Assembly: GCF_032444005.1 (NCBI RefSeq)
Contig: NW_027193546.1
Location: 806,001-870,000, forward strand
Reading direction: 5' to 3'
Length of the DNA: 64,000 nt
From: Ranitomeya imitator
Taxonomy: Eukaryota
Below, in pieces: positions 3,281 through 19,826 of the stretch (the stretch's first letter is position 1; every line of letters starts with the position of its first letter). Under the pieces are notes generated by a model, which saw only the letters and a program-made list of their open reading frames with translations, made no database searches and was not told where the DNA came from. A program made the translations under genes and the position numbers.

Positions 3281-3567
3281 AACAATGCATAAAAATGTGT
3301 CTTTCTGGGTTGTGATTGGTACATGAGGTAATGGCATAAATTAACATTCAATCACCTGATGTTGATATGATGAAAAATCTCTCCTAATTTCACTTGCTGC
3401 TTTCAACCGTGTATTGGGATTAACTGTGGGGGCATCATACATTGTGGAGAGTATGATCCACTCTGATCTGGCATGGTCATGACAATAGTCGGGATACCTG
3501 CCGCTACAGGGAAGGAAATTGTATATAATAAAGAAGCTGGAAAAATAATTGCAGAAACTGTACAATT

Positions 3568-3709
3568 GGCGGGAAATTCAAACTTCCCAACAGTTCTGTG
3601 TTCAGCCAATCAGCAGAGGAAGGGAGGAGCTAATGATTCTGTAAGCCCCGCCCCGGATAGCGTCATCTCTCCAGTTCTCTCTCTGGTCCACTCTTCCTCC
3701 ATATAAAGG
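3568..3709 (+). promoter_or_regulatory. H4 promoter (E2F/CHR/MYB/CCAAT-like module, GC box, GGTCC H4 element, TATA)
   Basis: GGCGGGAAATTCAAA 3568-3582, CCAAT 3606-3610, GCCCCGCCCC ~3645, GGTCC 3685-3689 (HINFP-type site II core), CATATAAAGG 3700-3709. Confidence 0.75.
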
Positions 3710-3749
3710 AGCAGTCCCTGAGGCTCAGGAATCAGTTTTTGCTCATTGA

Positions 3750-4070
<321 letters not shown>

Positions 4071-4100
4071 TTGTGTTCTCTTCTGTCCTCACAACCCAAA

Positions 4101-4138
4101 GGCTCTTTTCAGAGCCACCCACATCTTCTAAGTGAGAG
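4101..4138 (+). terminator. Histone 3' stem-loop plus HDE of H4
   Basis: AAA GGCTCT TTTC AGAGCC ACCCA at 4098-4121; purine-rich AAGTGAGAG ~4130-4138. Confidence 0.95.
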
Positions 4139-4900
4139 GCTGCACCTGACTGCTAGGATCTGATTTCTCTGCTTTGGTGATGTCGCTGTAATGTTAGAAC
4201 ACTCATCGGTGCCAACGTTACGCTCCGAATACTGAATAGTCCCAAGGATATCCTGACGTGGAAAGACTAAACGGCTTACCCGAAGCAGATCCCTCTACAG
4301 CTCTAATCAGGGGGGTGTTCAGGGCGGTTTCCAAATGTAGGTTAATATTCTGTCTAGACATTTAATATCCTGTTCTTATTGGGCGCTGATTAGTAGATTT
4401 ATGGGGGATATATATCCGCACTGGGCCGCAGTGATAATTTCCTGATCAGATCCGTGTACAGGGAATGTGGCTGTAGGAGGCAGCTGGATAGATGGACGCC
4501 CTGTGTGTCATCACATAGGGTACGGAGACTCCTATATGATGACCACGTCCTGGACACAAATGTTTCGGGTGGATGGCGCCTCTGAAGACTATTATAACCT
4601 CCTCAGAATAATGATGGGCTGTTTGAGGTCTGATAGCCACGGCTGCGCGTTTTGAGGTCCTGTCATGTATTTATATATATCCGGTGTGTGCAGTGTATGG
4701 GGGGACACAGGTGTTGGTTCTGTTCCCTACAGCTCCTGTCCTGTATATGTATATACAAAGCGTATACATTGTGTGCAGTGTATGGGGGACACAGCGCTGC
4801 CGGGGCCTGGGGTGAAGGTGCCGCATCTGTGGATACTCTGGTAAAGAAAAGATCAGCTGGAAAACGGCACGTAAGGAGTTAAACGGGAGAGGAAAGACGT

Positions 4901-5374
4901 GCAACAAAATTAATAAAGGGGATGGGAGAACTACAATACCCAGATAGATTAGCGAAATTAGGATTATTTAGTCTAGAAAAAAGACGACTGAGGGGCGATC
5001 TAATAACCATGTATAAGTATATAAGGGGACAATACAAATATCTCGCTGAGGATCTGTTTATACCAAGGAAGGTGACGGGCACAAGGGGGCATTCTTTGCG
5101 TCTGGAGGAGAGAAGGTTTTTCCACCAACATAGAAGAGGATTCTTTACTGTTAGGGCAGTGAGAATCTGGAATTGCTTGCCTGAGGAGGTGGTGATGGCG
5201 AACTCAGTCGAGGGGTTCAAGAGAGGCCTGGATGTCTTCCTGGAGCAGAACAATATTGTATCATACAATTAGGTTCTGTAGAGGGACGTAGATCTGGGGA
5301 TTTGTTGTGATGGAGTGTGGGCTGAACTGGAAGGACAAATGTCTTTTTTCGGCCTTACTAACTATGTTACTATG
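4901..5374 (+). mobile_element. 5'-truncated CR1 LINE copy (ORF2 C-terminus, 3' UTR, TTACTATG tail)
   Basis: 4901-5270 is identical to the reverse complement of 7496-7865; ends in TTACTAACTATGTTACTATG. Confidence 0.96.
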
Positions 5375-5744
5375 TACATCACTGAAGGCTGAGCGTTACC
5401 AAGGTTTCTCGCTCATTGTCTGATCACAGAATCCGTTGGGGAATTTGAATTCCCCGCTCATAATCTCCGGAGGATTGTTACAGGTCACTGATAGCGACAA
5501 CCATCCCCCACCCCCTTACTGCGGGACCTGCTAACTACATGTAGACCTCACCGCGGAGTATCAGACACTAAGGAGGGGACATTTCCTGCGAGCTTGGCAG
5601 ACGACACTCCACCTGAGGGTCTGAGACTTCATGTGGGATTGACCCATTCATCTCCTGTTATTCTGTGGATATGTGCACCAACAATGGCGGCAATGGTGTA
5701 TGAACTATCAGCCTCATGCGAGGACCCCCGAGATAGGCGGCGCC

Positions 5745-5813: not shown

Positions 5814-6206
5814 TCACTTGCTCTTGCTCGCCTTGCTGCTCTCGGTCTTCTTGGGCAGCAGCACGGCCTGGATGTTGGGCAGGACGCCCCCCTGGGCAAT
5901 GGTCACCCCACCCAGCAGCCTGTTCAGCTCCTCGTCATTGCGCACCGCCAGCTGCAGGTGACGGGGGATGATGCGGGTCTTCTTGTTGTCCCGGGCAGCA
6001 TTGCCGGCCAATTCCAGGATCTCAGCGGTCAGATACTCCAGCACAGCGGCCAGATAGACCGGAGCGCCGGCGCCGACTCTCTCAGCGTAGTTGCCCTTGC
6101 GGAGAAGCCTGTGCACACGGCCGACTGGGAACTGCAGTCCTGCCCGGGATGAGCGGGTCTTGGCCTTAGCACGGACCTTTCCTCCTTGTTTGCCGCGTCC
6201 AGACAT
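5814..6206 (-). CDS. H2A: Histone H2A (canonical, 130 aa)
   Basis: [40 protein letters not shown]...[15 protein letters not shown]; stem-loop 29 nt after the stop. Confidence 0.99.
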
Positions 6207-7383
6207 GATGCCGATAACTAATGACGGAAAATCGTGTAGAGAAGAGTCTGTGCTATGTCGCCTTATATAGTCCGTTGCTCCGCCCTCCTCTCCTGTCGTT
6301 GGACGGATCTGAAGATGAAAATGGAGAAGAGTATTGGAGATCCACCAATGAGCTACAGAGGGCAGAGCTTATTATTGCTCCTTTCTCAAATGAGTTTCTC
6401 ACCCAATAGAAAACGTTCGCTTTGGACAGAATAGATAAGGGGTGAAAACAGATATCTGTCCTGGAGCAGAAGGAAATGCAGAAATATTCTGTTGACTTGT
6501 TGTACTTGTGTCTTCTATCAGCCATATATTGCACTGACAGTCTGGCGGGTGAGGGGTTAATTCCTGTCAGGAGGCGGCTCCTCACTCACCCGCTTATTAT
6601 CCTGTGCAGATCCCCTGTGGTGTCCGCGCTTATACTATCACAGCCTGACTGAGACAAGTCTCCTATGTTCTGCCCGGAGCCTGATGTGACGCTGCCGGGT
6701 CTCGGGTGGGGGAAGTCGCCGCTTCTGTAAAGCGAGTGTGTAGTGGGGGGTCAGCACACACGGACACTGAGGAGTTAAATGGAGGCGGATATTCCTGTAT
6801 CTGGGATTGGTCGGCGCCTGCGGATGTCTCTCGCTCATTGGCTGATTACAGATCCGTTGCTGGTTTTGAATTCCCCGCTCAGTTTCTGCTCTTTGTCCGT
6901 CGGGTTTATTACCGGCCCCTTTGCTGGAGCGGCGATCGCTGATAATAGTGTGCGGTATTTTTTCTTCTACTATTAACTTGACCACACGGTCTGTTTTACC
7001 AGCACCTCCGTGTCCTTGACCTGAGTGCACACCATTATCCTTGTTCATGCCCCCAAACACGGGCGGGGATCGGTCGCCATTATTACTCTGGGGAGGTTAT
7101 AATAACCTTCATAGGCGCCATCCATCCGAAACATTAGTGTCCGGGACGTGGTCATCACATAGGAGTCTCCGTACCCGGTACACAGGGCGTCCATCTATCC
7201 AGCTGCCTCAGACAGCCACATTCCCTGTGAATATTCGCTGCCCTATTCACCCCACACGGATCTGATCAGGAGAATATTACTGTACAGCCCATTTCCCTGT
7301 AATTCCGTGTTCTATTTATTTTATATATCAATAAGAAGAAACCGCATTTGTGCTGTGATGGGAGTCACCAGTACTTGGGGCAT
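6053..7383. repeat. Left copy of the 1,331-bp direct duplication flanking the full-length CR1
   Basis: Matches 12102-13432 (offset 6,049); I found one mismatch (6364 A vs 12413 G). Confidence 0.96.
6263..6407 (-). promoter_or_regulatory. H2A promoter (TATA plus CCAAT boxes)
   Basis: Minus-strand CTATATAA at 6263-6270; CCAAT/ATTGG at 6333-6337, 6345-6349 and 6403-6407. Confidence 0.75.
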
Positions 7384-7490
7384 AGTAACATAGTAACATA
7401 GTTAGTAAGGCCGAAAAAAGACATTTGTCCATCCAGTTCAGCCTATATTCCATCATAATAAATACCCAGATCTACGTCCTTCTACAGAAC

Positions 7491-10271
7491 CTAATAATTG
7501 TATGATACAATATTGTTCTGCTCCAGGAAGACATCCAGGCCTCTCTTGAACCCCTCGACTGAGTTCGCCATCACCACCTCCTCAGGCAAGCAATTCCAGA
7601 TTCTCACTGCCCTAACAGTAAAGAATCCTCTTCTATGTTGGTGGAAAAACCTTCTCTCCTCCAGACGCAAAGAATGCCCCCTTGTGCCCGTCACCTTCCT
7701 TGGTATAAACAGATCCTCAGCGAGATATTTGTATTGTCCCCTTATATACTTATACATGGTTATTAGATCGCCCCTCAGTCGTCTTTTTTCTAGACTAAAT
7801 AATCCTAATTTCGCTAATCTATCTGGGTATTGTAGTTCTCCCATCCCCTTTATTAATTTTGTTGCCCTCCTTTGTACTCTCTCTAGTTCCATTATATCCT
7901 TCCTGAGCACCGGTGCCCAAAACTGGACACAGTACTCCATGTGCGGTCTAACTAGGGATTTGTACAGAGGCAGTAGAATGCTCTCATCATGTGTATCCAG
8001 ACCTCTTTTAATGCACCCCATGATCCTGTTTGCCTTGGCAGCTGCTGCCTGGCACTGGCTGCTCCAGGTAAGTTTATCATTAACTAGGATCCCCAAGTCC
8101 TTCTCCCTGTCAGATTTACCCAGTGGTTTCCCGTTCAGTGTGTAATGGTGATATTGATTCCCTCTTCCCATGTGTATAACCTTACATTTATCATTGTTAA
8201 ACCTCATCTGCCACCTTTCAGCCCAAGTTTCCAACTTATCCAGATCCATCTGTAGCAGAATACTATCTTCTCTTGTATTAACTGCTTTACATAGTTTTGT
8301 ATCATCTGCAAATATCGATATTTTACTGTGTAAACCTTCTACCAGATCATTAATGAATATGTTGAAGAGAACAGGTCCCAATACTGACCCCTGCGGTACC
8401 CCACTGGTCACAGCGACCCAGTTAGAGACTATACCATTTATAACCACCCTCTGCTTTCTATCACTAAGCCAGTTACTAACCCATTTACACACATTTTCCC
8501 CCAGACCAAGCATTCTCATTTTGTGTACCAACCTCTTGTGCGGCACGGTATCAAACGCTTTGGAAAAATCGAGATATACCACGTCCAATGACTCACCGTG
8601 GTCCAGTCTATAGCTTACCTCTTCATAAAAACTGATTAGATTGGTTTGACAGGAGCGATTTCTCATAAACCCATGCTGATATGGAGTTAAACAGTTATTC
8701 TCATTGAGATAATCCAGAATAACATCCCTCAGAAACCCTTCAAATATTTTACCAACAATAGAGGTTAGACTTACTGGCCTATAATTTCCAGGTTCACTTT
8801 TAGAGCCCTTTTTGAATATTGGCACCACATTTGCTATGCGCCAGTCCTGCGGAACAGACCCTGTCGCTATAGAGTCACTAAAAATAAGAAATAATGGTTT
8901 ATCTATTACATTACTTAGTTCTCTTAGTACTCGTGGGTGTATGCCATCCGGACCCGGAGATTTATCTATTTTAATCTTATTTAGCCGGTTTCGCACCTCT
9001 TCTTGGGTTAGATTGGTGACCCTTAATATAGGGTTTTCATTGTTTCTTGGGATTTCACCTAGCATTTCATTTTCCACCGTGAATACCGTGGAGAAGAAGG
9101 TGTTTAATATGTTAGCTTTTTCCTCGTCATCTACAACCATTCTTTCCTCACTATTTTTTAAGGGGCCTACATTTTCAGTTTTTATTCTTTTACTATTGAT
9201 ATAGTTGAAGAACAGTTTGGGATTAGTTTTACTCTCCTTAGCAATGTGCTTCTCTGTTTCCTTTTTGGCAGCTTTAATTAGTTTTTTAGATAAAGTATTT
9301 TTCTCCCTATAGTTTTGTAGAGCTTCAATGGTGCCATCCTGCTTTAGTAGTGCAAATGCTTTCTTTTTACTGTTAATTGCCTGTCTTACTTCTTTGTTTA
9401 GCCACATTGGGTTTTTCCTATTTCTAGTCCTTTTATTCCCACAAGGTATAAACCGCTTACACTGCCTATTTAGGATGTTCTTAAACATTTCCCATTTATT
9501 ATCTGTATTCTCATTTCTGAGGATATTGTCCCAGTCTACCAGATTAAGGGCATCTCTAAGCTGTTCAAACTTTGCCTTCCTAAAGTTCAATGTTTTTGTG
9601 ACTCCCTGACAAGTCCCCCTAGTGAAAGACAGGTGAAACTGCACAATATTGTGGTCGCTATTTCCTAAATGCCCAACCACCTGCAGATTTGTTATTCTGT
9701 CAGGTCTATTAGATAGTATTAGGTCTAAAAGTGCTGCTCCTCTGGTTGGATTCTGCACCAATTGTGAAAGATAATTTTTCTTGGTTATTAGCAGAAACCT
9801 GTTGCCTTTATGGGTTTCACAGGTTTCTGTTTCCCAGTTAATATCCGGGTAGTTAAAGTCCCCCATAACCAGGACCTCATTATGAGTTGCAGCTTCATCT
9901 ATCTGCTTTAGAAGTAGACTTTCCATGCTTTCTGTTATATTTGGGGGTTTGTAACAGACCCCAATGAGAATTTTGTTACCATTTTTCCCTCCATGAATTT
10001 CAACCCATATGGACTCGACATCCTCATTCCCTTCGCTAATATCCTCCCTTAAAGTGGACTTTAGACAAGACTTTACATAGAGACAAACCCCTCCTCCTCT
10101 CCGATTTTTACGATCCTTTCTAAACAGACTGTAACCCTGTAAGTTAACTGCCCAGTCATAGCTTTCATCTAACCATGTCTCGGTTATTCCCACTATGTCA
10201 AAGTTACCTGTAGATATTTCTGCTTCTAGTTCTTCCATCTTGTTTGTCAGGCTTCTGGCGTTTGCGAGCAT
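7491..10271 (-). CDS. CR1 ORF2: AP-endonuclease plus reverse transcriptase (926 aa from the first Met; frame is open further upstream)
   Basis: NARSL, GITETW, GDFNYP and SDHN endonuclease motifs; PGPDG, YRPVSLTS, QHGF, YLDFSKAFD, GVPQGSVLGP and FADD RT motifs; no stops. Confidence 0.97.
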   Translation of the reverse strand: MLANARSLTNKMEELEAEISTGNFDIVGITETWLDESYDWAVNLQGYSLFRKDRKNRRGGGVCLYVKSCLKSTLREDISEGNEDVESIWVEIHGGKNGNKILIGVCYKPPNITESMESLLLKQIDEAATHNEVLVMGDFNYPDINWETETCETHKGNRFLLITKKNYLSQLVQNPTRGAALLDLILSNRPDRITNLQVVGHLGNSDHNIVQFHLSFTRGTCQGVTKTLNFRKAKFEQLRDALNLVDWDNILRNENTDNKWEMFKNILNRQCKRFIPCGNKRTRNRKNPMWLNKEVRQAINSKKKAFALLKQDGTIEALQNYREKNTLSKKLIKAAKKETEKHIAKESKTNPKLFFNYINSKRIKTENVGPLKNSEERMVVDDEEKANILNTFFSTVFTVENEMLGEIPRNNENPILRVTNLTQEEVRNRLNKIKIDKSPGPDGIHPRVLRELSNVIDKPLFLIFSDSIATGSVPQDWRIANVVPIFKKGSKSEPGNYRPVSLTSIVGKIFEGFLRDVILDYLNENNCLTPYQHGFMRNRSCQTNLISFYEEVSYRLDHGESLDVVYLDFSKAFDTVPHKRLVHKMRMLGLGENVCKWVSNWLSDRKQRVVINGIVSNWVAVTSGVPQGSVLGPVLFNIFINDLVEGLHSKISIFADDTKLCKAVNTREDSILLQMDLDKLETWAERWQMRFNNDKCKVIHMGRGNQYHHYTLNGKPLGKSDREKDLGILVNDKLTWSSQCQAAAAKANRIMGCIKRGLDTHDESILLPLYKSLVRPHMEYCVQFWAPVLRKDIMELERVQRRATKLIKGMGELQYPDRLAKLGLFSLEKRRLRGDLITMYKYIRGQYKYLAEDLFIPRKVTGTRGHSLRLEERRFFHQHRRGFFTVRAVRIWNCLPEEVVMANSVEGFKRGLDVFLEQNNIVSYNY

Positions 10272-10408: not shown

Positions 10409-11362
10409 CTAGTTTAACGCCCTCCTGATGAGTGTAGCGAGTCTTCTGGCGAATGTGTGTTTCCCAGGTTTGTTGAGGTGTAGTCCGTCTCTGGCAAGGA
10501 GTCCATCATACCAGTAATTCACACCGTGGTCCAGGAATCCAAATCCTTGTTGTCTGCACCATCGTCTTAGCCAGTTGTTTGCATCAAGGATCCTGTTCCA
10601 TCTCCTGGTGCCATGCCCGTCTACTGGAAGGATAGAAGAAAAAACTACCTGTGCATCCAGTTCCTTTACTTTCTTCCCCAACTCTTCAAAGTCCTTGCAG
10701 ATTGTCGGTAGGTCCTTCCTTGCCGTGTCATTGGTGCCAACATGTATCAGAAGAAATGGGTGGACGTCCTTGGAGCTGAAGAGCTTTGGTATCCTATCGG
10801 TCACATCCTTGATCATCGCACCTGGAAGGCAGCATACTTCTCTTGCAGTTATGTCCGGTCTGCAGATGGCTGCTTCGGTGCCTCTCAGTAGTGAGTCTCC
10901 CACCACCACCACTCTTCGTTGCTTCTTGGCTGTACTTTTTGCTGTCACTTGTTGCTGTGTGCCCTTTTCTTTTTTGCTTGCTGGTATTGCTTCATTCTTA
11001 GGTGTGCCATCTTCATCCTCTACAAAGATTTGATATCGGTTCTTCAGTTGTGTGGTTGGTGATTTCTCCATGGTCTTCTTGCTTCTTTTGGTCACATGCT
11101 TCCACTCATCTGCTTTTGGAGGTTCTCTGACACTTTTTGCACCTTCTGTGACCAGTAGAGATGCTTCTGTTCTGTCTAGAAAGTCTTCATTCTCTTTGAT
11201 GAGTTTCAAAGTTGCTATTCTTTCTTCCAGACCCCGCACCTTTTCTTCTAAAAGGGCCACTAGTCTACACTTCTGACAGGTGAAATTGGATTCTTCTTCT
11301 GGTCGATCTGTGAACATGTAGCACATGCTGCAGCTCACCATGTAGGTTGTCACATCTGCCAT
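10409..11362 (-). CDS. CR1 ORF1: CxxC..CxxC zinc finger, coiled coil, SGNH/GDSL esterase (317 aa)
   Basis: CSMC...CQKC; SGNH blocks VGDSLLRG, LPGA, HVGTND and DGLH are intact. Confidence 0.93.
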   Translation of the reverse strand: MADVTTYMVSCSMCYMFTDRPEEESNFTCQKCRLVALLEEKVRGLEERIATLKLIKENEDFLDRTEASLLVTEGAKSVREPPKADEWKHVTKRSKKTMEKSPTTQLKNRYQIFVEDEDGTPKNEAIPASKKEKGTQQQVTAKSTAKKQRRVVVVGDSLLRGTEAAICRPDITAREVCCLPGAMIKDVTDRIPKLFSSKDVHPFLLIHVGTNDTARKDLPTICKDFEELGKKVKELDAQVVFSSILPVDGHGTRRWNRILDANNWLRRWCRQQGFGFLDHGVNYWYDGLLARDGLHLNKPGKHTFARRLATLIRRALN

Positions 11363-11463: not shown

Positions 11464-12097
11464 GGTTTGGTGATGCTTTCGAAGCAGCTGGTCCCGGCTG
11501 TACCCAACGATCTTCTAGCTTAGGGAGACTTCGCTTCTCCCAGAAGGCACCTGGAATATGCAAATTAGCCTCCTGAAGCTTGAATCCCTGGTTTGGTGAT
11601 GCTTTCGAAGCAGCTGGTCCCGGCTGTACCCAACGATCTTCTAGCTTAGGGAGACTTCGCTTCTCCCAGAAGGCACCTGGAATATTCAAATTAGCCTCCT
11701 GAAGCTTGAATCCCTGGTTTGGTGATGCTTTCGAAGCAGCTGGTCCCGGCTGTACCCAACGATCTTCTAGCTTAGGGAGACTTCGCTTCTCCCAGAAGGC
11801 ACCTGGAATATGCAAATTAGCCTCCTGAAGCTTGAATCCCTGGTTTGGTGATGCTTTCGAAGCAGCTGGTCCCGGCTGTACCCAACGATCTTCTAGCTTA
11901 GGGAGACTTCGCTTCTCCCAGAAGGCACCTGGAATATGCAAATTAGCCTCCTGAAGCTTGAATCCCTGGTTTGGTGATGCTTTCGAAGCAGCTGGTCCCG
12001 GCTGTACCCAACGATCTTCTAGCTTAGGGAGACTTCGCTTCTCCCAGAAGGCACCTGGAATATGCAAATTAGCCTCCTGAAGCTTGAATCCCTGGTT
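11464..12097 (-). repeat. Five 126-bp tandem monomers forming the CR1 5' UTR
   Basis: Units start at 11464, 11590, 11716, 11842 and 11968 (4-nt stub at 12094); one substitution seen, in unit 2. Confidence 0.96.
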
Positions 12098-12255
12098 CAA
12101 GGATAGACCGGAGCGCCGGCGCCGACTCTCTCAGCGTAGTTGCCCTTGCGGAGAAGCCTGTGCACACGGCCGACTGGGAACTGCAGTCCTGCCCGGGATG
12201 AGCGGGTCTTGGCCTTAGCACGGACCTTTCCTCCTTGTTTGCCGCGTCCAGACAT
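12097..12255 (-). pseudogene. H2A: Truncated H2A (51 H2A codons plus Pro, then TGA) fused to the CR1 5' end
   Basis: MSGRGKQ...GAGAPVYP*; identical to the H2A 5' end as far as 12102, with the stop codon supplied by the junction. Confidence 0.93.
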
Positions 12256-13432
12256 GATGCCGATAACTAATGACGGAAAATCGTGTAGAGAAGAGTCTGT
12301 GCTATGTCGCCTTATATAGTCCGTTGCTCCGCCCTCCTCTCCTGTCGTTGGACGGATCTGAAGATGAAAATGGAGAAGAGTATTGGAGATCCACCAATGA
12401 GCTACAGAGGGCGGAGCTTATTATTGCTCCTTTCTCAAATGAGTTTCTCACCCAATAGAAAACGTTCGCTTTGGACAGAATAGATAAGGGGTGAAAACAG
12501 ATATCTGTCCTGGAGCAGAAGGAAATGCAGAAATATTCTGTTGACTTGTTGTACTTGTGTCTTCTATCAGCCATATATTGCACTGACAGTCTGGCGGGTG
12601 AGGGGTTAATTCCTGTCAGGAGGCGGCTCCTCACTCACCCGCTTATTATCCTGTGCAGATCCCCTGTGGTGTCCGCGCTTATACTATCACAGCCTGACTG
12701 AGACAAGTCTCCTATGTTCTGCCCGGAGCCTGATGTGACGCTGCCGGGTCTCGGGTGGGGGAAGTCGCCGCTTCTGTAAAGCGAGTGTGTAGTGGGGGGT
12801 CAGCACACACGGACACTGAGGAGTTAAATGGAGGCGGATATTCCTGTATCTGGGATTGGTCGGCGCCTGCGGATGTCTCTCGCTCATTGGCTGATTACAG
12901 ATCCGTTGCTGGTTTTGAATTCCCCGCTCAGTTTCTGCTCTTTGTCCGTCGGGTTTATTACCGGCCCCTTTGCTGGAGCGGCGATCGCTGATAATAGTGT
13001 GCGGTATTTTTTCTTCTACTATTAACTTGACCACACGGTCTGTTTTACCAGCACCTCCGTGTCCTTGACCTGAGTGCACACCATTATCCTTGTTCATGCC
13101 CCCAAACACGGGCGGGGATCGGTCGCCATTATTACTCTGGGGAGGTTATAATAACCTTCATAGGCGCCATCCATCCGAAACATTAGTGTCCGGGACGTGG
13201 TCATCACATAGGAGTCTCCGTACCCGGTACACAGGGCGTCCATCTATCCAGCTGCCTCAGACAGCCACATTCCCTGTGAATATTCGCTGCCCTATTCACC
13301 CCACACGGATCTGATCAGGAGAATATTACTGTACAGCCCATTTCCCTGTAATTCCGTGTTCTATTTATTTTATATATCAATAAGAAGAAACCGCATTTGT
13401 GCTGTGATGGGAGTCACCAGTACTTGGGGCAT
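12102..13432. repeat. Right copy of the 1,331-bp direct duplication (H2A 5' end, promoter and upstream spacer)
   Basis: Matches 6053-7383. Confidence 0.96.
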
Positions 13433-15588: not shown

Positions 15589-15618
15589 TTTGGGGTGAGG
15601 AGCGGAGCACGGANNNNN

Positions 15619-16017
<399 letters not shown>

Positions 16018-16910: not shown

Positions 16911-18412
16911 GCCATTATCTGTCCCAATCACTGCACAAAGTCCTCCTTCAATAAGGGCTAATTTCCAGCTATCTGCAGATTATTCCGAGGCTGAGTTCTG
17001 CGAGCGACACTCAATTTGCACTGACAGTCTGGCGGGTGAGGGGTCAATCCCTGTCAGTGTTTCTCCTCCGCTCCATCTGCACAGGAGGCGGCTCTTCACT
17101 CACCCGCGTATTATCCTGTGCAGATCCCCTGTGGTGTCCGCGCTGATCCTATCACAGCCTGACTGAGACAAGTCTCCTATGTTCTGCCCGGAGCCTGATG
17201 TGACGCTGCCGGGTCTCGGGTGGGGGAAGTCGCCGCTTCTATAAAGCGAGTGAGTAGTGGGGGTCAGCACACAAGGACACTAAGGAGTTAATGGGGGCGG
17301 ATGTTCCTGTATCTGGGATTGGTCGGCGCCTGTGGATGTCTCTCGCTCATTGGCTGATTACAGATCCGTTGCTGGTTTTGAATTTCCCGCTCAATCGCTT
17401 TTCTTTGTCCGTCGGATTATTACCGGCCCCTCTGCTGGAGCGGCGATCGCTGTGTATACCGGTGGGAGCAGCTCTACCCCGCTGATAATACCGGGTCCTG
17501 TCCTCCCAGCTGTCTGCCCCCGAACACGGGGATCAGTCGCCATTATTATTCTGAGGAGGTTATAATAGTCTTCAGAGGCGACATCCATCCGACACATTAG
17601 TGTCCAGGACTTGGTCATCACACAGGAGCCTCCGTACCCGGTACACAGGGCGTCCATCTATCCAGCTGCCTCTTACAGCCACATTCCCTGTACACGGATC
17701 TGATCAGGAAATTATCACTGCGGCCCAGTGCGGATATATATCCCCCATGAATCCATGTTATCTTTGTAGGTCAATGAGAAGAAACCGCATCACCCGAAGT
17801 CCGCGGTGAAAGACGGGGGAGCAGACACGGCCCCAGTATGTCAGGACCCGGGAGCATACAACTAGCACGTCCCAGGCTGAGGCCGGTACTACAGGCAGCC
17901 GCACAGGGGATATTTTGCCCTGCAGAGACGCTGAGCCGGATACTAATCAATCAGCGCCCAATAAGAACAGGATCTTAAATGTCTAGACAGAATATTAACC
18001 TACATTTGGAAACCGCCCGGAACACCCCCTGATTAGAGCTGTAGAGAGATCTGCTTCCAATAAGCCTTTCCACGTCAGGATATCCTTCGGAAACTGAATG
18101 TGTGGGAATATGGTTAAAGAGACCCTACTCCCAGATCATACACACACGGAATCCGTCGGGTACAAAACAGGATTTGCAAATAGGTCTCACAACCAAAAGC
18201 AGCGACAGAACCATCCGCCCAAAAACGGCATCAGAGGACGTTACCGAACTGCGGATCAGGGTCAGAATTACCATTCCCCACAATTATTTGGCCGATGGTA
18301 GTTTTCGACTATTCAGTATTCGGAGCGTAAATTCGGCACCGATGAGTGTTCTACTAACATTACAGCGACATCACCACAGCAGAGAAATGAGATCCTAGCA
18401 GTCAGGTGCAGC

Positions 18413-18450
18413 CTCTCACTTAGAAGATGTGGGTGGCTCTGAAAAGAGCC
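18413..18450 (-). terminator. Histone 3' stem-loop plus HDE of the second H4
   Basis: Minus strand GGCTCT TTTC AGAGCC ACCCA (18435-18450), then AAGTGAGAG. Confidence 0.95.
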
Positions 18451-18480
18451 TTTGGGTTGTGAAGACAGAAGAGAACACAA

Positions 18481-18801
<321 letters not shown>

Positions 18802-18843
18802 TTAATGAGCAAAAACTGATTCCTGAGCCTCAGGGACTGCACC

Positions 18844-18986
18844 TTTATATGGAGGGAGAATGGACCAGAGAGAGAACTGCAGAGATGACGCACTTCCGGG
18901 AGGGGGCTTACAGAATCTACATTAGCTCCTCCCTTTCTCTGCTGATTGGCTAAATACTAAACTGTAGGGAAGTTTGATTTTCCCGC
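18844..18986 (-). promoter_or_regulatory. Second H4 promoter
   Basis: ATATAAA at 18844-18850, GGTCC at 18862-18866, CCAAT at 18945-18949, degenerate CHR/E2F-like module at 18973-18986. Confidence 0.7.
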
Positions 18987-19124
18987 TCATTGCTCAGTTT
19001 CTGCAATTATCTTTCCAGCTTCTATTATGTGTAATTTCCTTCCCTTATGATTGAGGGTATCCTAAATATTGTCATTACTGTTCCAGATCATGGTGGATCA
19101 TATCTTCCACAACAGATGATGCCC

Positions 19125-19300
19125 CCAGTTACCCTCCACACAGTATGATGCCTCCTACACAGTAAGATACCCACACAGCAGGATGTCCCCACAGTTACTG
19201 TGTGGGGGTATAATACCCCCAGTAACTCCCCAAACAGTATGATGCCCTAAGTCCCCCCCCCACACACACACACACACACTTTGATGCACCCACAGTTATC
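19125..19300. repeat. Degenerate CACAGTATGATGCCCC-type minisatellite plus (CA)n microsatellite
   Basis: Repeated cagtatgatgcc-like units; CA run at 19260-19279. Confidence 0.6.
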
Positions 19301-19311
19301 CCCTATACAAT

Positions 19312-19826
19312 GTAACATAGTAACATAGTTAGTAAGGCCGAAAAAATACATTTGTCCTTCCAGTTCAGCCTATATTCCATCATAATAAATCCCCAGATCT
19401 ACGTCCTTCTACAGAACCTAATAATTGTATGATACAATATTGTTCTGCTCCAGGAAGACATCCAGGCCTCTCTTGAACCCCTCGACTGAGTTCGCCATCA
19501 CCACCTCCTCAGGCAAGCAATTCCAGATTCTCACTGCCCTAACAGTAAAGAATCCTCTTCTATGTTGGTGGAAAAACCTTCTCTCTTCCAGACGCAAAGA
19601 ATGCCCCCTTGTGCCCGTCACCTTCCTTGGTATAAACAGATCCTCAGCGAGATATTTGTATTGTCCCCTTATATACTTATACATGGTTATTAGATCGCCC
19701 CGTCTTTTTTCTAGACTAAATAATCCTAATTTCGCTAACCTATCTGGGTATTGTAGTTCTCCCATTCCCTTTATTAATTTTGTTGGCCTCCTTTGTACTC
19801 TCTCTAGTTCCATTATATCCTTCCTG
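19312..19826 (-). mobile_element. Third, 5'-truncated CR1 copy
   Basis: Same ORF2 C-terminus, 3' UTR and tail as the full-length element, with a 6-nt deletion (EKRRG vs EKRRLRG) and a few substitutions. Confidence 0.95.

What the first reader, a model, noticed from the sequence alone, without database searches (positions are those of the whole stretch)
5270..5330. Probable fossil of ADAR (A-to-I) editing written into the genome by retrotransposition
The other two CR1 copies agree on A at six positions where this copy has G on the element's sense strand: 5283, 5304, 5307, 5315, 5317 and 5319, all within 37 nt of the 3' UTR. The adjacent ~370 nt of ORF2 shows no difference from the full-length copy. 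All six As have a 5' U or A neighbour and none a 5' G, matching the known ADAR preference. At two other diagnostic UTR sites this copy matches the 19312-19826 copy, so a close parent is available for comparison. Inference: the template RNA was edited in the UTR region that ORF2 must recognise, and it was still reverse-transcribed. A 3-nt deletion near the stop is also present.
Basis: partly seen in the sequence, partly recalled or inferred. Interest (0 to 1): 0.75.

Follow-up and report, generated by a model that had tools for sequence, protein, structure and literature searches.

The report
A-to-G burst in frog CR1 tail
One short, recently inserted copy of a frog jumping gene differs from its two neighbours only by six A-to-G changes packed into 37 bases (plus a 3-base loss), a pattern best explained by RNA editing of the element's transcript before it was copied back into DNA, but the checks that would settle this could not be run.

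Summary
The 5'-truncated CR1 copy at 4902-5375 (+) matches the consensus of the two other copies in the window, except for six A>G changes at 5283, 5304, 5307, 5315, 5317 and 5319 and a 3-nt deletion before the stop codon.

Six random positions fall within 37 nt about once in 100,000 trials. All six follow A or T: 6 of 7 such adenines in the span changed, and 0 of 5 that follow G. So this was one event, not gradual decay. A-to-I editing of CR1 RNA, fixed by reverse transcription, fits best.

It is not proven:
- No read data and no other genome copies could be obtained. Whether the Gs are private or shared by a subfamily, the direction of change, and read support are all untested.
- No double-stranded partner for the segment is predicted within the element.

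The scan's first readers noted two more such clusters in CR1 3' UTRs of this genome (s1-271920, s1-295475). Both are unchecked. This is a new example of a known kind of footprint.

The parts
4902..5375 (+). Copy A: 5'-truncated CR1 insertion (last ~122 codons of ORF2, the stop codon and a 103-nt 3' UTR). It lies between a histone H4 ORF and an H2A ORF.
   Evidence: blastn of the window against itself; alignment A1; Pfam hits on the neighbouring ORFs.
5283..5319 (+). Cluster of six A>G differences on the sense strand (5283, 5304, 5307, 5315, 5317, 5319). This is 6 of the 12 adenines in the span, all preceded by A or T.
5267..5268 (+). Site of the 3-nt deletion (ATT of a tandem ATTATT). It removes one Tyr codon just before the stop. 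It is derived in copy A, because copies B and C and the metagenome relative L001 all keep the codon.
5270..5272 (+). ORF2 stop codon (TAG) of copy A
   Evidence: (ORF 4922..5272)
5319..5355 (+). Predicted 3' stem-loop, conserved in all three copies (GGCUGAA...UUCGGCC with an inner stem). It is the likely counterpart of the 3' recognition hairpin of stringent-type LINEs. Only the closing pair (5319, A-U to G-U) is touched.
   Evidence: folds of copies A, B and C
5356..5375 (+). 3' tail with 8-nt repeat units (ACTATGTT-type), unchanged in copy A
7388..7873 (-). 3' end of copy B, the intact full-length CR1 (ORF2 7491-10271, ORF1 10409-11362). It has A at all six sites, plus two private UTR changes.
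19310..19785 (-). Copy C: a second 5'-truncated CR1. It has A at all six sites and several private changes of mixed type, including a 6-nt deletion.

Best explanation
A CR1 sense transcript was hyper-edited by an ADAR-type adenosine deaminase over a short double-stranded stretch of its 3' UTR, between the ORF2 stop codon and the 3' hairpin. This was either the RNA that gave rise to copy A or the RNA of a recent ancestor. The duplex most likely formed with an antisense CR1 3'-end transcript. The CR1 reverse transcriptase read each inosine as G during target-primed reverse transcription, so the edits became permanent A>G changes in the new DNA copy.

Shown: the single-event, strand-specific, 5'-G-avoiding A/G cluster in an otherwise consensus-identical young copy.

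Inferred: the direction of change (A to G), the enzyme, the duplex partner, and that the event happened at this copy's own birth. The 3-nt deletion in a tandem ATTATT 15 nt upstream is taken as a separate slippage, possibly made by the same reverse-transcription event.
For: 1. Six of six private substitutions are A>G on the element's sense strand, with no other substitution in 474 nt.
2. All six lie within 37 nt (P about 1e-5 for random adenines).
3. 6 of 7 adenines after A/T changed, against 0 of 5 after G/C (P = 0.0076). This matches the ADAR motif of G depleted one base upstream (PMC4365171; PMC2873906, which includes Xenopus tropicalis).
4. Half of all adenines in the span changed. That is the density reported for ADAR-type hypermutation of avian retroviruses, 'nearly 50% of the adenosines' (review PMC12925331).
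5. The family is young and active: copy B is intact and copy A has zero background divergence. Retrotransposition of an edited RNA is therefore timely.
6. The adjacent deletion is derived on copy A's lineage, which favours placing the substitutions there too.
7. Established knowledge, not tested here: dsRNA adenosine deaminase activity was first found in Xenopus eggs and embryos. Those are the cells in which heritable insertions arise.
Against: 1. No double-stranded partner is predicted within the element. The UTR fold is not better than shuffles (z -0.5). Four of the six sites are mostly unpaired in folds of the 3'-terminal 150-600 nt, and predictions change with the length folded. The segment's best duplex with the rest of the CR1 RNA is weaker than average (z +0.5 to +0.9). 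The duplex therefore has to be assumed.
2. A long sense-antisense duplex should also have edited the ORF2 part (0 of 64 A/T-preceded adenines changed) and the last 56 nt (0 of 10).
3. Two UAG adenines, in the triplet ADAR favours most (5280 just upstream of the span and 5290 inside it), are unchanged.
4. There is no 3'-G enrichment (2 of 6).
5. Direction of change, privacy of the Gs and read support are untested.
6. The 3-nt deletion next to the cluster is not an ADAR product.
7. In human cell culture, ADAR1 restricts L1 without detectable editing of L1 RNA (PMC5224506).
Confidence: 0.55

Rival explanations
1. Copy A is an ordinary member of a G-type CR1 subfamily, or it received a ~50-bp patch (deletion plus six Gs) by gene conversion or template switching from such a copy. 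The cluster would then not be this copy's own event. The founder of that subfamily could still have been an edited RNA.
For: The 3-nt deletion sits 15 nt from the cluster in a copy with no other change, as expected for one imported patch. Two other first-reader notes report A>G clusters in CR1 3' UTRs of the same genome (s1-271920, s1-295475). One of them is also 61 letters long. If the sites are the same, this could be one shared haplotype.
Against: Ordinary subfamily-diagnostic differences are a mix of types. Six of six A>G, all after A/T, is not expected from gradual divergence. Outside the patch, copy A is identical to the master-like copy B over 366 nt. No G-type copy exists in the window.
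Confidence: 0.17
2. The direction is reversed. G is ancestral, and the common ancestor of copies B and C acquired six G>A changes, for example by cytidine deamination of the first-strand cDNA (AID/APOBEC-like).
For: With three copies and no UTR outgroup, the tree is unrooted and the cluster sits on the branch between A and (B, C). Read as G>A, the changes are still context-biased: 6 of 10 W-preceded Gs changed against 0 of 7 S-preceded (P = 0.017).
Against: The base after the changed G is T (four times) or G (twice), never A. This does not match the common GA or GG contexts of APOBEC3-type editing, and only one site fits the AID WRC hotspot (established knowledge). The discriminating neighbour is the 5' base, which is the ADAR position. 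The adjacent deletion is derived on copy A's side. Both the intact element and a second, older copy carry A.
Confidence: 0.1
3. A polymerase error burst rather than RNA editing. One option is the CR1 reverse transcriptase misinserting dC opposite rA, for example under a skewed dNTP pool. The other is an error-prone DNA polymerase (Pol eta type, WA>WG) filling a short patch on the sense strand during or after insertion.
For: WA>WG on one strand is also the Pol eta signature (established knowledge). Error-prone synthesis could produce the neighbouring 3-nt slippage deletion in the same patch. No dsRNA partner is needed, which fits the negative folds.
Against: 6 of 7 WA sites changed in 37 nt. 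This is far denser than a per-site misinsertion rate of a few percent would give (my estimate of the rate from general knowledge; not tested here). A dNTP-pool effect should spread along the whole cDNA, yet 0 of 74 other WA adenines changed.
Confidence: 0.12
4. Assembly or consensus artefact: the six Gs are not in the animal's DNA.
For: Raw reads could not be examined. The region is a multi-copy repeat in a very repetitive genome.
Against: Mis-polishing in repeats pulls a copy towards the family consensus, not away from it. I know of no sequencing error mode that gives six A>G changes on one strand in 37 nt with clean flanks.
Confidence: 0.04

Closest known systems
ADAR-type A-to-G hypermutation of retroviruses fixed in proviral DNA (Rous-associated virus / avian leukosis virus; Felder et al. 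1994, Hajjar & Linial 1995, as summarised in PMC12925331)
   Same: Clustered A>G changes of one type on the sense strand of a reverse-transcribed element. About half of the adenosines in the affected stretch changed. The stretch is a non-coding terminal region (U3 there, 3' UTR here), and the change is preserved as DNA.
   Different: [quoted passage not shown] The cluster is much shorter (37 nt, six sites). In the viral case an inverted repeat supplied the duplex; none is evident here.
Hyper-edited RNA clusters in transcripts of inverted repeats (Porath et al. 2014, PMC4365171; Zaranek et al. 2010, PMC2873906, including Xenopus tropicalis)
   Same: Dense A>G clusters with G depleted one base upstream.
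   Different: Those are RNA-versus-DNA mismatches at a locus. Here the difference is between DNA copies, so the edit must have passed through reverse transcription. Downstream G enrichment is not seen here (2 of 6).
DNA editing footprints of APOBECs in genomic retrotransposon copies (Carmi et al. 2011; Knisbacher & Levanon 2016, PMC4866542)
   Same: Same logic and same detection method: clusters of one mismatch type between paralogous retroelement copies, with the direction set by the subfamily consensus.
   Different: Those are G>A changes from C deamination of cDNA, mostly in LTR elements. Here the change reads as A>G with an ADAR-type neighbour preference. From memory, not from a paper I could open: Knisbacher & Levanon 2015 (Ann N Y Acad Sci 1341:115) discuss RNA-edited retrotransposons re-entering mammalian genomes.
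ADAR1 restriction of human LINE-1 (Orecchini et al. 2017, PMC5224506)
   Same: ADAR meets a LINE ribonucleoprotein.
   Different: That restriction is editing-independent, and no edited site was found in more than 2.5 kb of L1 RNA. The present case would be a LINE RNA that was edited and still retrotransposed.

Membership tests
CR1-clade non-LTR retrotransposon (the element carrying the cluster) | ORF2 with an apurinic-type endonuclease domain and a reverse transcriptase domain | tested here: met
   In the full-length copy B, ORF2 (926 aa) hits Exo_endo_phos (E 5e-16) and RVT_1 (E 4e-34). Copy A is 97% identical to its last 486 nt.
CR1-clade non-LTR retrotransposon (the element carrying the cluster) | 3' end without a poly(A) tail, ending in short tandem repeats after a stem-loop, with frequent 5' truncation | tested here: met
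   The tail of 8-nt repeats and the conserved hairpin 5319-5355 are present in all three copies. Copies A and C are truncated to about 0.5 kb.
ADAR hyper-editing footprint | Only A>G changes, all on one strand, in a dense cluster | tested here: met
   Six of six private substitutions are sense-strand A>G within 37 nt. Six of the 12 adenines in the span changed.
ADAR hyper-editing footprint | G depleted at the 5' neighbour and enriched at the 3' neighbour | tested here: inconclusive
   5' neighbour: 0 of 6 are G, although 5 of 12 adenines in the span follow G/C (P = 0.0076). 3' neighbour: G at only 2 of 6, so no enrichment. The sample is small.
ADAR hyper-editing footprint | The edited segment lies in double-stranded RNA | tested here: not met
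   No significant local fold (z -0.5). Pairing of four of the six sites is low or unstable across folding contexts. The best intramolecular duplex with the rest of the CR1 RNA is weaker than average. An intermolecular antisense partner cannot be tested with these tools.
ADAR hyper-editing footprint | Direction A to G relative to the parental or consensus sequence | tested here: inconclusive
   Two of the three copies in the window have A. The neighbouring deletion is derived in copy A. No UTR outgroup or family consensus could be obtained.
ADAR hyper-editing footprint | The same sites are seen as A/G mismatches in RNA of the organism | not testable with these tools

The most novel reading that the evidence does not exclude
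The stretch of this CR1 family's 3' UTR between the stop codon and the recognition hairpin may be a recurrent ADAR target in the frog germline or early embryo. RNAs edited there would remain competent for retrotransposition. ADAR would then be a steady, directional source of new CR1 3'-UTR variants and subfamilies in this poison-frog genome. The visible clusters would be confined to this stretch because edits in ORF2 or in the hairpin and tail abolish copying. The two other clusters noted by the scan (s1-271920, s1-295475) would be independent events of the same kind.
Probability: 0.2. Interest if true: 0.6.

Novelty: new member of a known kind. Interest (0 to 1): 0.4.

Why it matters
If confirmed, this is a clean natural example of an RNA edit becoming a heritable DNA change through a LINE. 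The element is a young, active CR1 family in an amphibian.

It would show that an edited LINE RNA can still be used as a template. That contrasts with the editing-independent restriction of human L1 by ADAR1.

It would also point to a cheap genome-wide test: strand-specific A>G clusters in CR1 tails. That test would show how often RNA editing feeds mutations into the very large, repeat-rich genomes of poison frogs.

A single copy alone has no functional consequence for the host.

Tried and rejected
The two Ranitomeya imitator proteins with CR1-derived stretches (P0049, P0085) therefore could not be turned into DNA loci.
- Protein word search with the ORF2 C-terminus: the best full-coverage relatives were only 76% identical. 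No same-species copies were found.
- The search for related loci in metagenomes gave three loci. Only L001 is close (76% aa), and its contig ends just after the stop codon. It polarises the deletion but not the six sites.
- The search for related loci in viral and genome collections and a degenerate DNA pattern in genome and viral collections found nothing.
- Earlier findings searched by sequence: blank.
- Rfam scan of 4800-5500: only a chance-level mir-16 hit (E 0.91).
- The Knisbacher & Levanon 2015 paper is not held.

Explanations rejected:
- Independent point mutations after insertion: rejected on clustering and type.
- CpG decay: none of the six Gs follows a C.
- ADAR deamination of dA in the cDNA strand of the RNA:DNA hybrid (Zheng et al. 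2017, cited): it would give sense-strand T>C, not A>G.
- Intramolecular pairing of the segment with the 3' repeat tail: it appears in one minimum-energy fold but not in the centroid, and it is not significant.

Full report
**What is there**

The window holds three copies of one young CR1 family.
- Copy A: 4902-5375 (+), 5'-truncated.
- Copy B: 7388 to about 12100 (-), full length. It has an intact 926-aa ORF2 (endonuclease plus reverse transcriptase) and a 317-aa ORF1.
- Copy C: 19310-19785 (-), 5'-truncated.

Copy A lies between a histone H4 ORF and a histone H2A ORF. Earlier notes of this scan place the window in a poison-frog histone cluster. Two annotated Ranitomeya imitator proteins carry stretches 93-94% identical to the CR1 ORF2 C-terminus.

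**Check of the observation**

The alignment and a column-by-column list of differences confirm every statement of fact in the finding.
- Copy A has G where copies B and C have A at 5283, 5304, 5307, 5315, 5317 and 5319.
- It lacks 3 nt (one Tyr codon of a tandem ATTATT) just before the stop codon at 5270-5272.
- It is identical to copy B from 4902 to 5267.
- It agrees with copy C at the two positions where copy B has private changes (5299, 5332).
- It has no other private change in 474 nt.

By contrast, copy C has private changes of several types (G>A, A>G, C>A and a 6-nt deletion), and copy B has two transversions.

**Is it more than chance?**

Yes.
- Six adenines drawn at random from the copy fall within 37 nt with a probability of about 1e-5. 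All six being the same substitution type makes chance smaller still.
- The span contains 12 adenines. Six of the seven that follow A or T changed, and none of the five that follow G or C did (P = 0.0076).
- The copy shows zero background divergence, so the cluster cannot be an accumulation of ordinary mutations. It is one event, or one imported patch.

**What kind of event?**

The cluster has three features of ADAR hyper-editing.
- It has a single mismatch type, on one strand.
- About half of the adenines in the span changed.
- It avoids a 5' G (PMC4365171; PMC2873906, which shows the same motif in Xenopus tropicalis RNA).

There are precedents for such edits being preserved as DNA after reverse transcription. 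The A-to-G hypermutated avian retroviruses had 'nearly 50% of the adenosines' substituted in a terminal non-coding region (review PMC12925331). From established knowledge, dsRNA adenosine deaminase activity is high in amphibian eggs and embryos, which are the cells where heritable insertions arise.

I therefore take A-to-I editing of a CR1 sense RNA, followed by target-primed reverse transcription, as the best explanation, with a probability of about 0.55. That figure covers editing of either this copy's template RNA or a recent ancestor's RNA.

**What does not fit, or is missing**

1. No duplex is predicted within the element.
   - The UTR does not fold better than shuffled sequence (z -0.5).
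   - Four of the six sites are mostly unpaired when the 3'-terminal 150-600 nt are folded, and predictions change with the length folded.
   - The segment's best duplex with any other part of the 4.7-kb CR1 RNA is weaker than that of average 45-nt windows (z +0.5 to +0.9).
   - A partner would have to be a separate antisense CR1 3' end. That is plausible in a genome full of truncated copies in both orientations, but I could not test it.

2. The cluster is sharply bounded.
   - None of 64 A/T-preceded adenines in the ORF2 part changed, and none of 10 in the last 56 nt.
   - The boundaries coincide with the stop codon on one side and the conserved 3' hairpin (5319-5355) on the other.
   - One reading is survivorship: only edits in the dispensable part of the UTR are compatible with copying. 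This is my inference.
Only site 5319 touches the hairpin, changing its closing A-U pair to G-U.

3. The 3-nt deletion 15 nt upstream is not an ADAR product. Its closeness to the cluster, in an otherwise unchanged copy, hints at a single patch event.

4. Two UAG adenines, one just upstream of the span (5280) and one inside it (5290), are unchanged. There is also no 3'-G enrichment.

**Direction of change**

With three copies, the cluster lies on an unrooted branch.
- The only outgroup I could obtain, a metagenome contig encoding a 76%-identical ORF2 end (L001), stops right after the stop codon. It shows that the deletion is derived in copy A, but it says nothing directly about the six sites.
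- Read the other way (G>A in the ancestor of B and C), the changed Gs are followed by T four times and G twice, never by A. That does not fit the usual cytidine-deaminase contexts.
- In both readings the discriminating neighbour is the 5' base, which is the ADAR position.

I put the reversed direction at about 0.1.

**Rivals**

- **G-type subfamily or a conversion/template-switch patch (about 0.17).** This would move the event to an ancestor rather than remove it, because gradual divergence does not give six of six A>G changes after A/T. Two unchecked first-reader notes in this genome are relevant: s1-271920 (seven A>G in 56 bp of a CR1 3' UTR on another piece) and s1-295475 (a 61-letter A>G cluster 83.9 kb beyond this window). 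They are either the same haplotype, meaning a subfamily or segmental duplicate, or independent events, meaning a recurrent process. I could not see their sequences.
- **Polymerase error burst (about 0.12).** The enzyme would be either the reverse transcriptase or a Pol eta-type polymerase. This shares the WA>WG motif and could explain the deletion, but it is far too dense (6 of 7 sites).
- **Assembly artefact (about 0.04).** It cannot be excluded without reads, but mis-polishing would pull a copy towards the consensus, not away from it.

**What could not be done**

- The public collections within reach hold no further copies of this family.

**Comparison with what is known, and novelty**

Footprints of editing enzymes in genomic retroelement copies are an established idea.
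- For APOBEC G>A changes it is well documented (PMC4866542; PMC2873906).
- ADAR-type A>G hypermutants of retroviruses are known.
- For LINEs, the experimental literature I could read reports that ADAR1 restricts human L1 without editing it (PMC5224506).

A CR1 copy in a frog with an ADAR-type cluster would be a new member of a known kind. It is not a new mechanism.

**Verdict**

Interest is moderate at 0.4, and higher if a family-wide scan shows that such clusters recur in this UTR stretch.

Noticed in passing
window 6053-7383 and 12102-13432: Two 1,331-bp direct repeats, 99.9% identical, flank the intact full-length CR1 copy B. The scan already has this as a long target-site duplication in a histone H2A gene (s1-271832).
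   Followed up: no
window 22272-64000: About 41.7 kb of a 36-bp satellite runs to the end of the window. Copies are about 88-90% alike.
   Followed up: partly
window 11464-12097: 126-bp tandem monomers lie at the 5' end of the full-length CR1 and are nearly identical to each other. Others in this scan have noted them as a candidate monomer promoter.
   Followed up: no
window 10409-11362 (-): CR1 ORF1 (317 aa) carries a GDSL-lipase/esterase-like domain (Lipase_GDSL_2, E 3e-9) and a weak OSK-domain hit.
   Followed up: no
window 3427-4617 vs 17540-19127: Inverted repeats of about 1.2 kb, 90-92% identical, cover the histone H4 ORF region (3759-4070) in the first arm. Further shared modules lie at 6529-7228, 12578-13277 and 17016-17691. 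These are histone-cluster repeat units in both orientations.
   Followed up: no
window 4902-5375 (+) and 7388-7873 (-): Copy A and the 3' end of copy B are convergent inverted repeats, 97% identical and about 2 kb apart. A read-through transcript across both would form roughly 480 bp of dsRNA and would be a present-day ADAR substrate. This cannot explain a DNA difference.
   Followed up: no
window 15614-15898: A run of 285 N (assembly gap or masked stretch).
   Followed up: no
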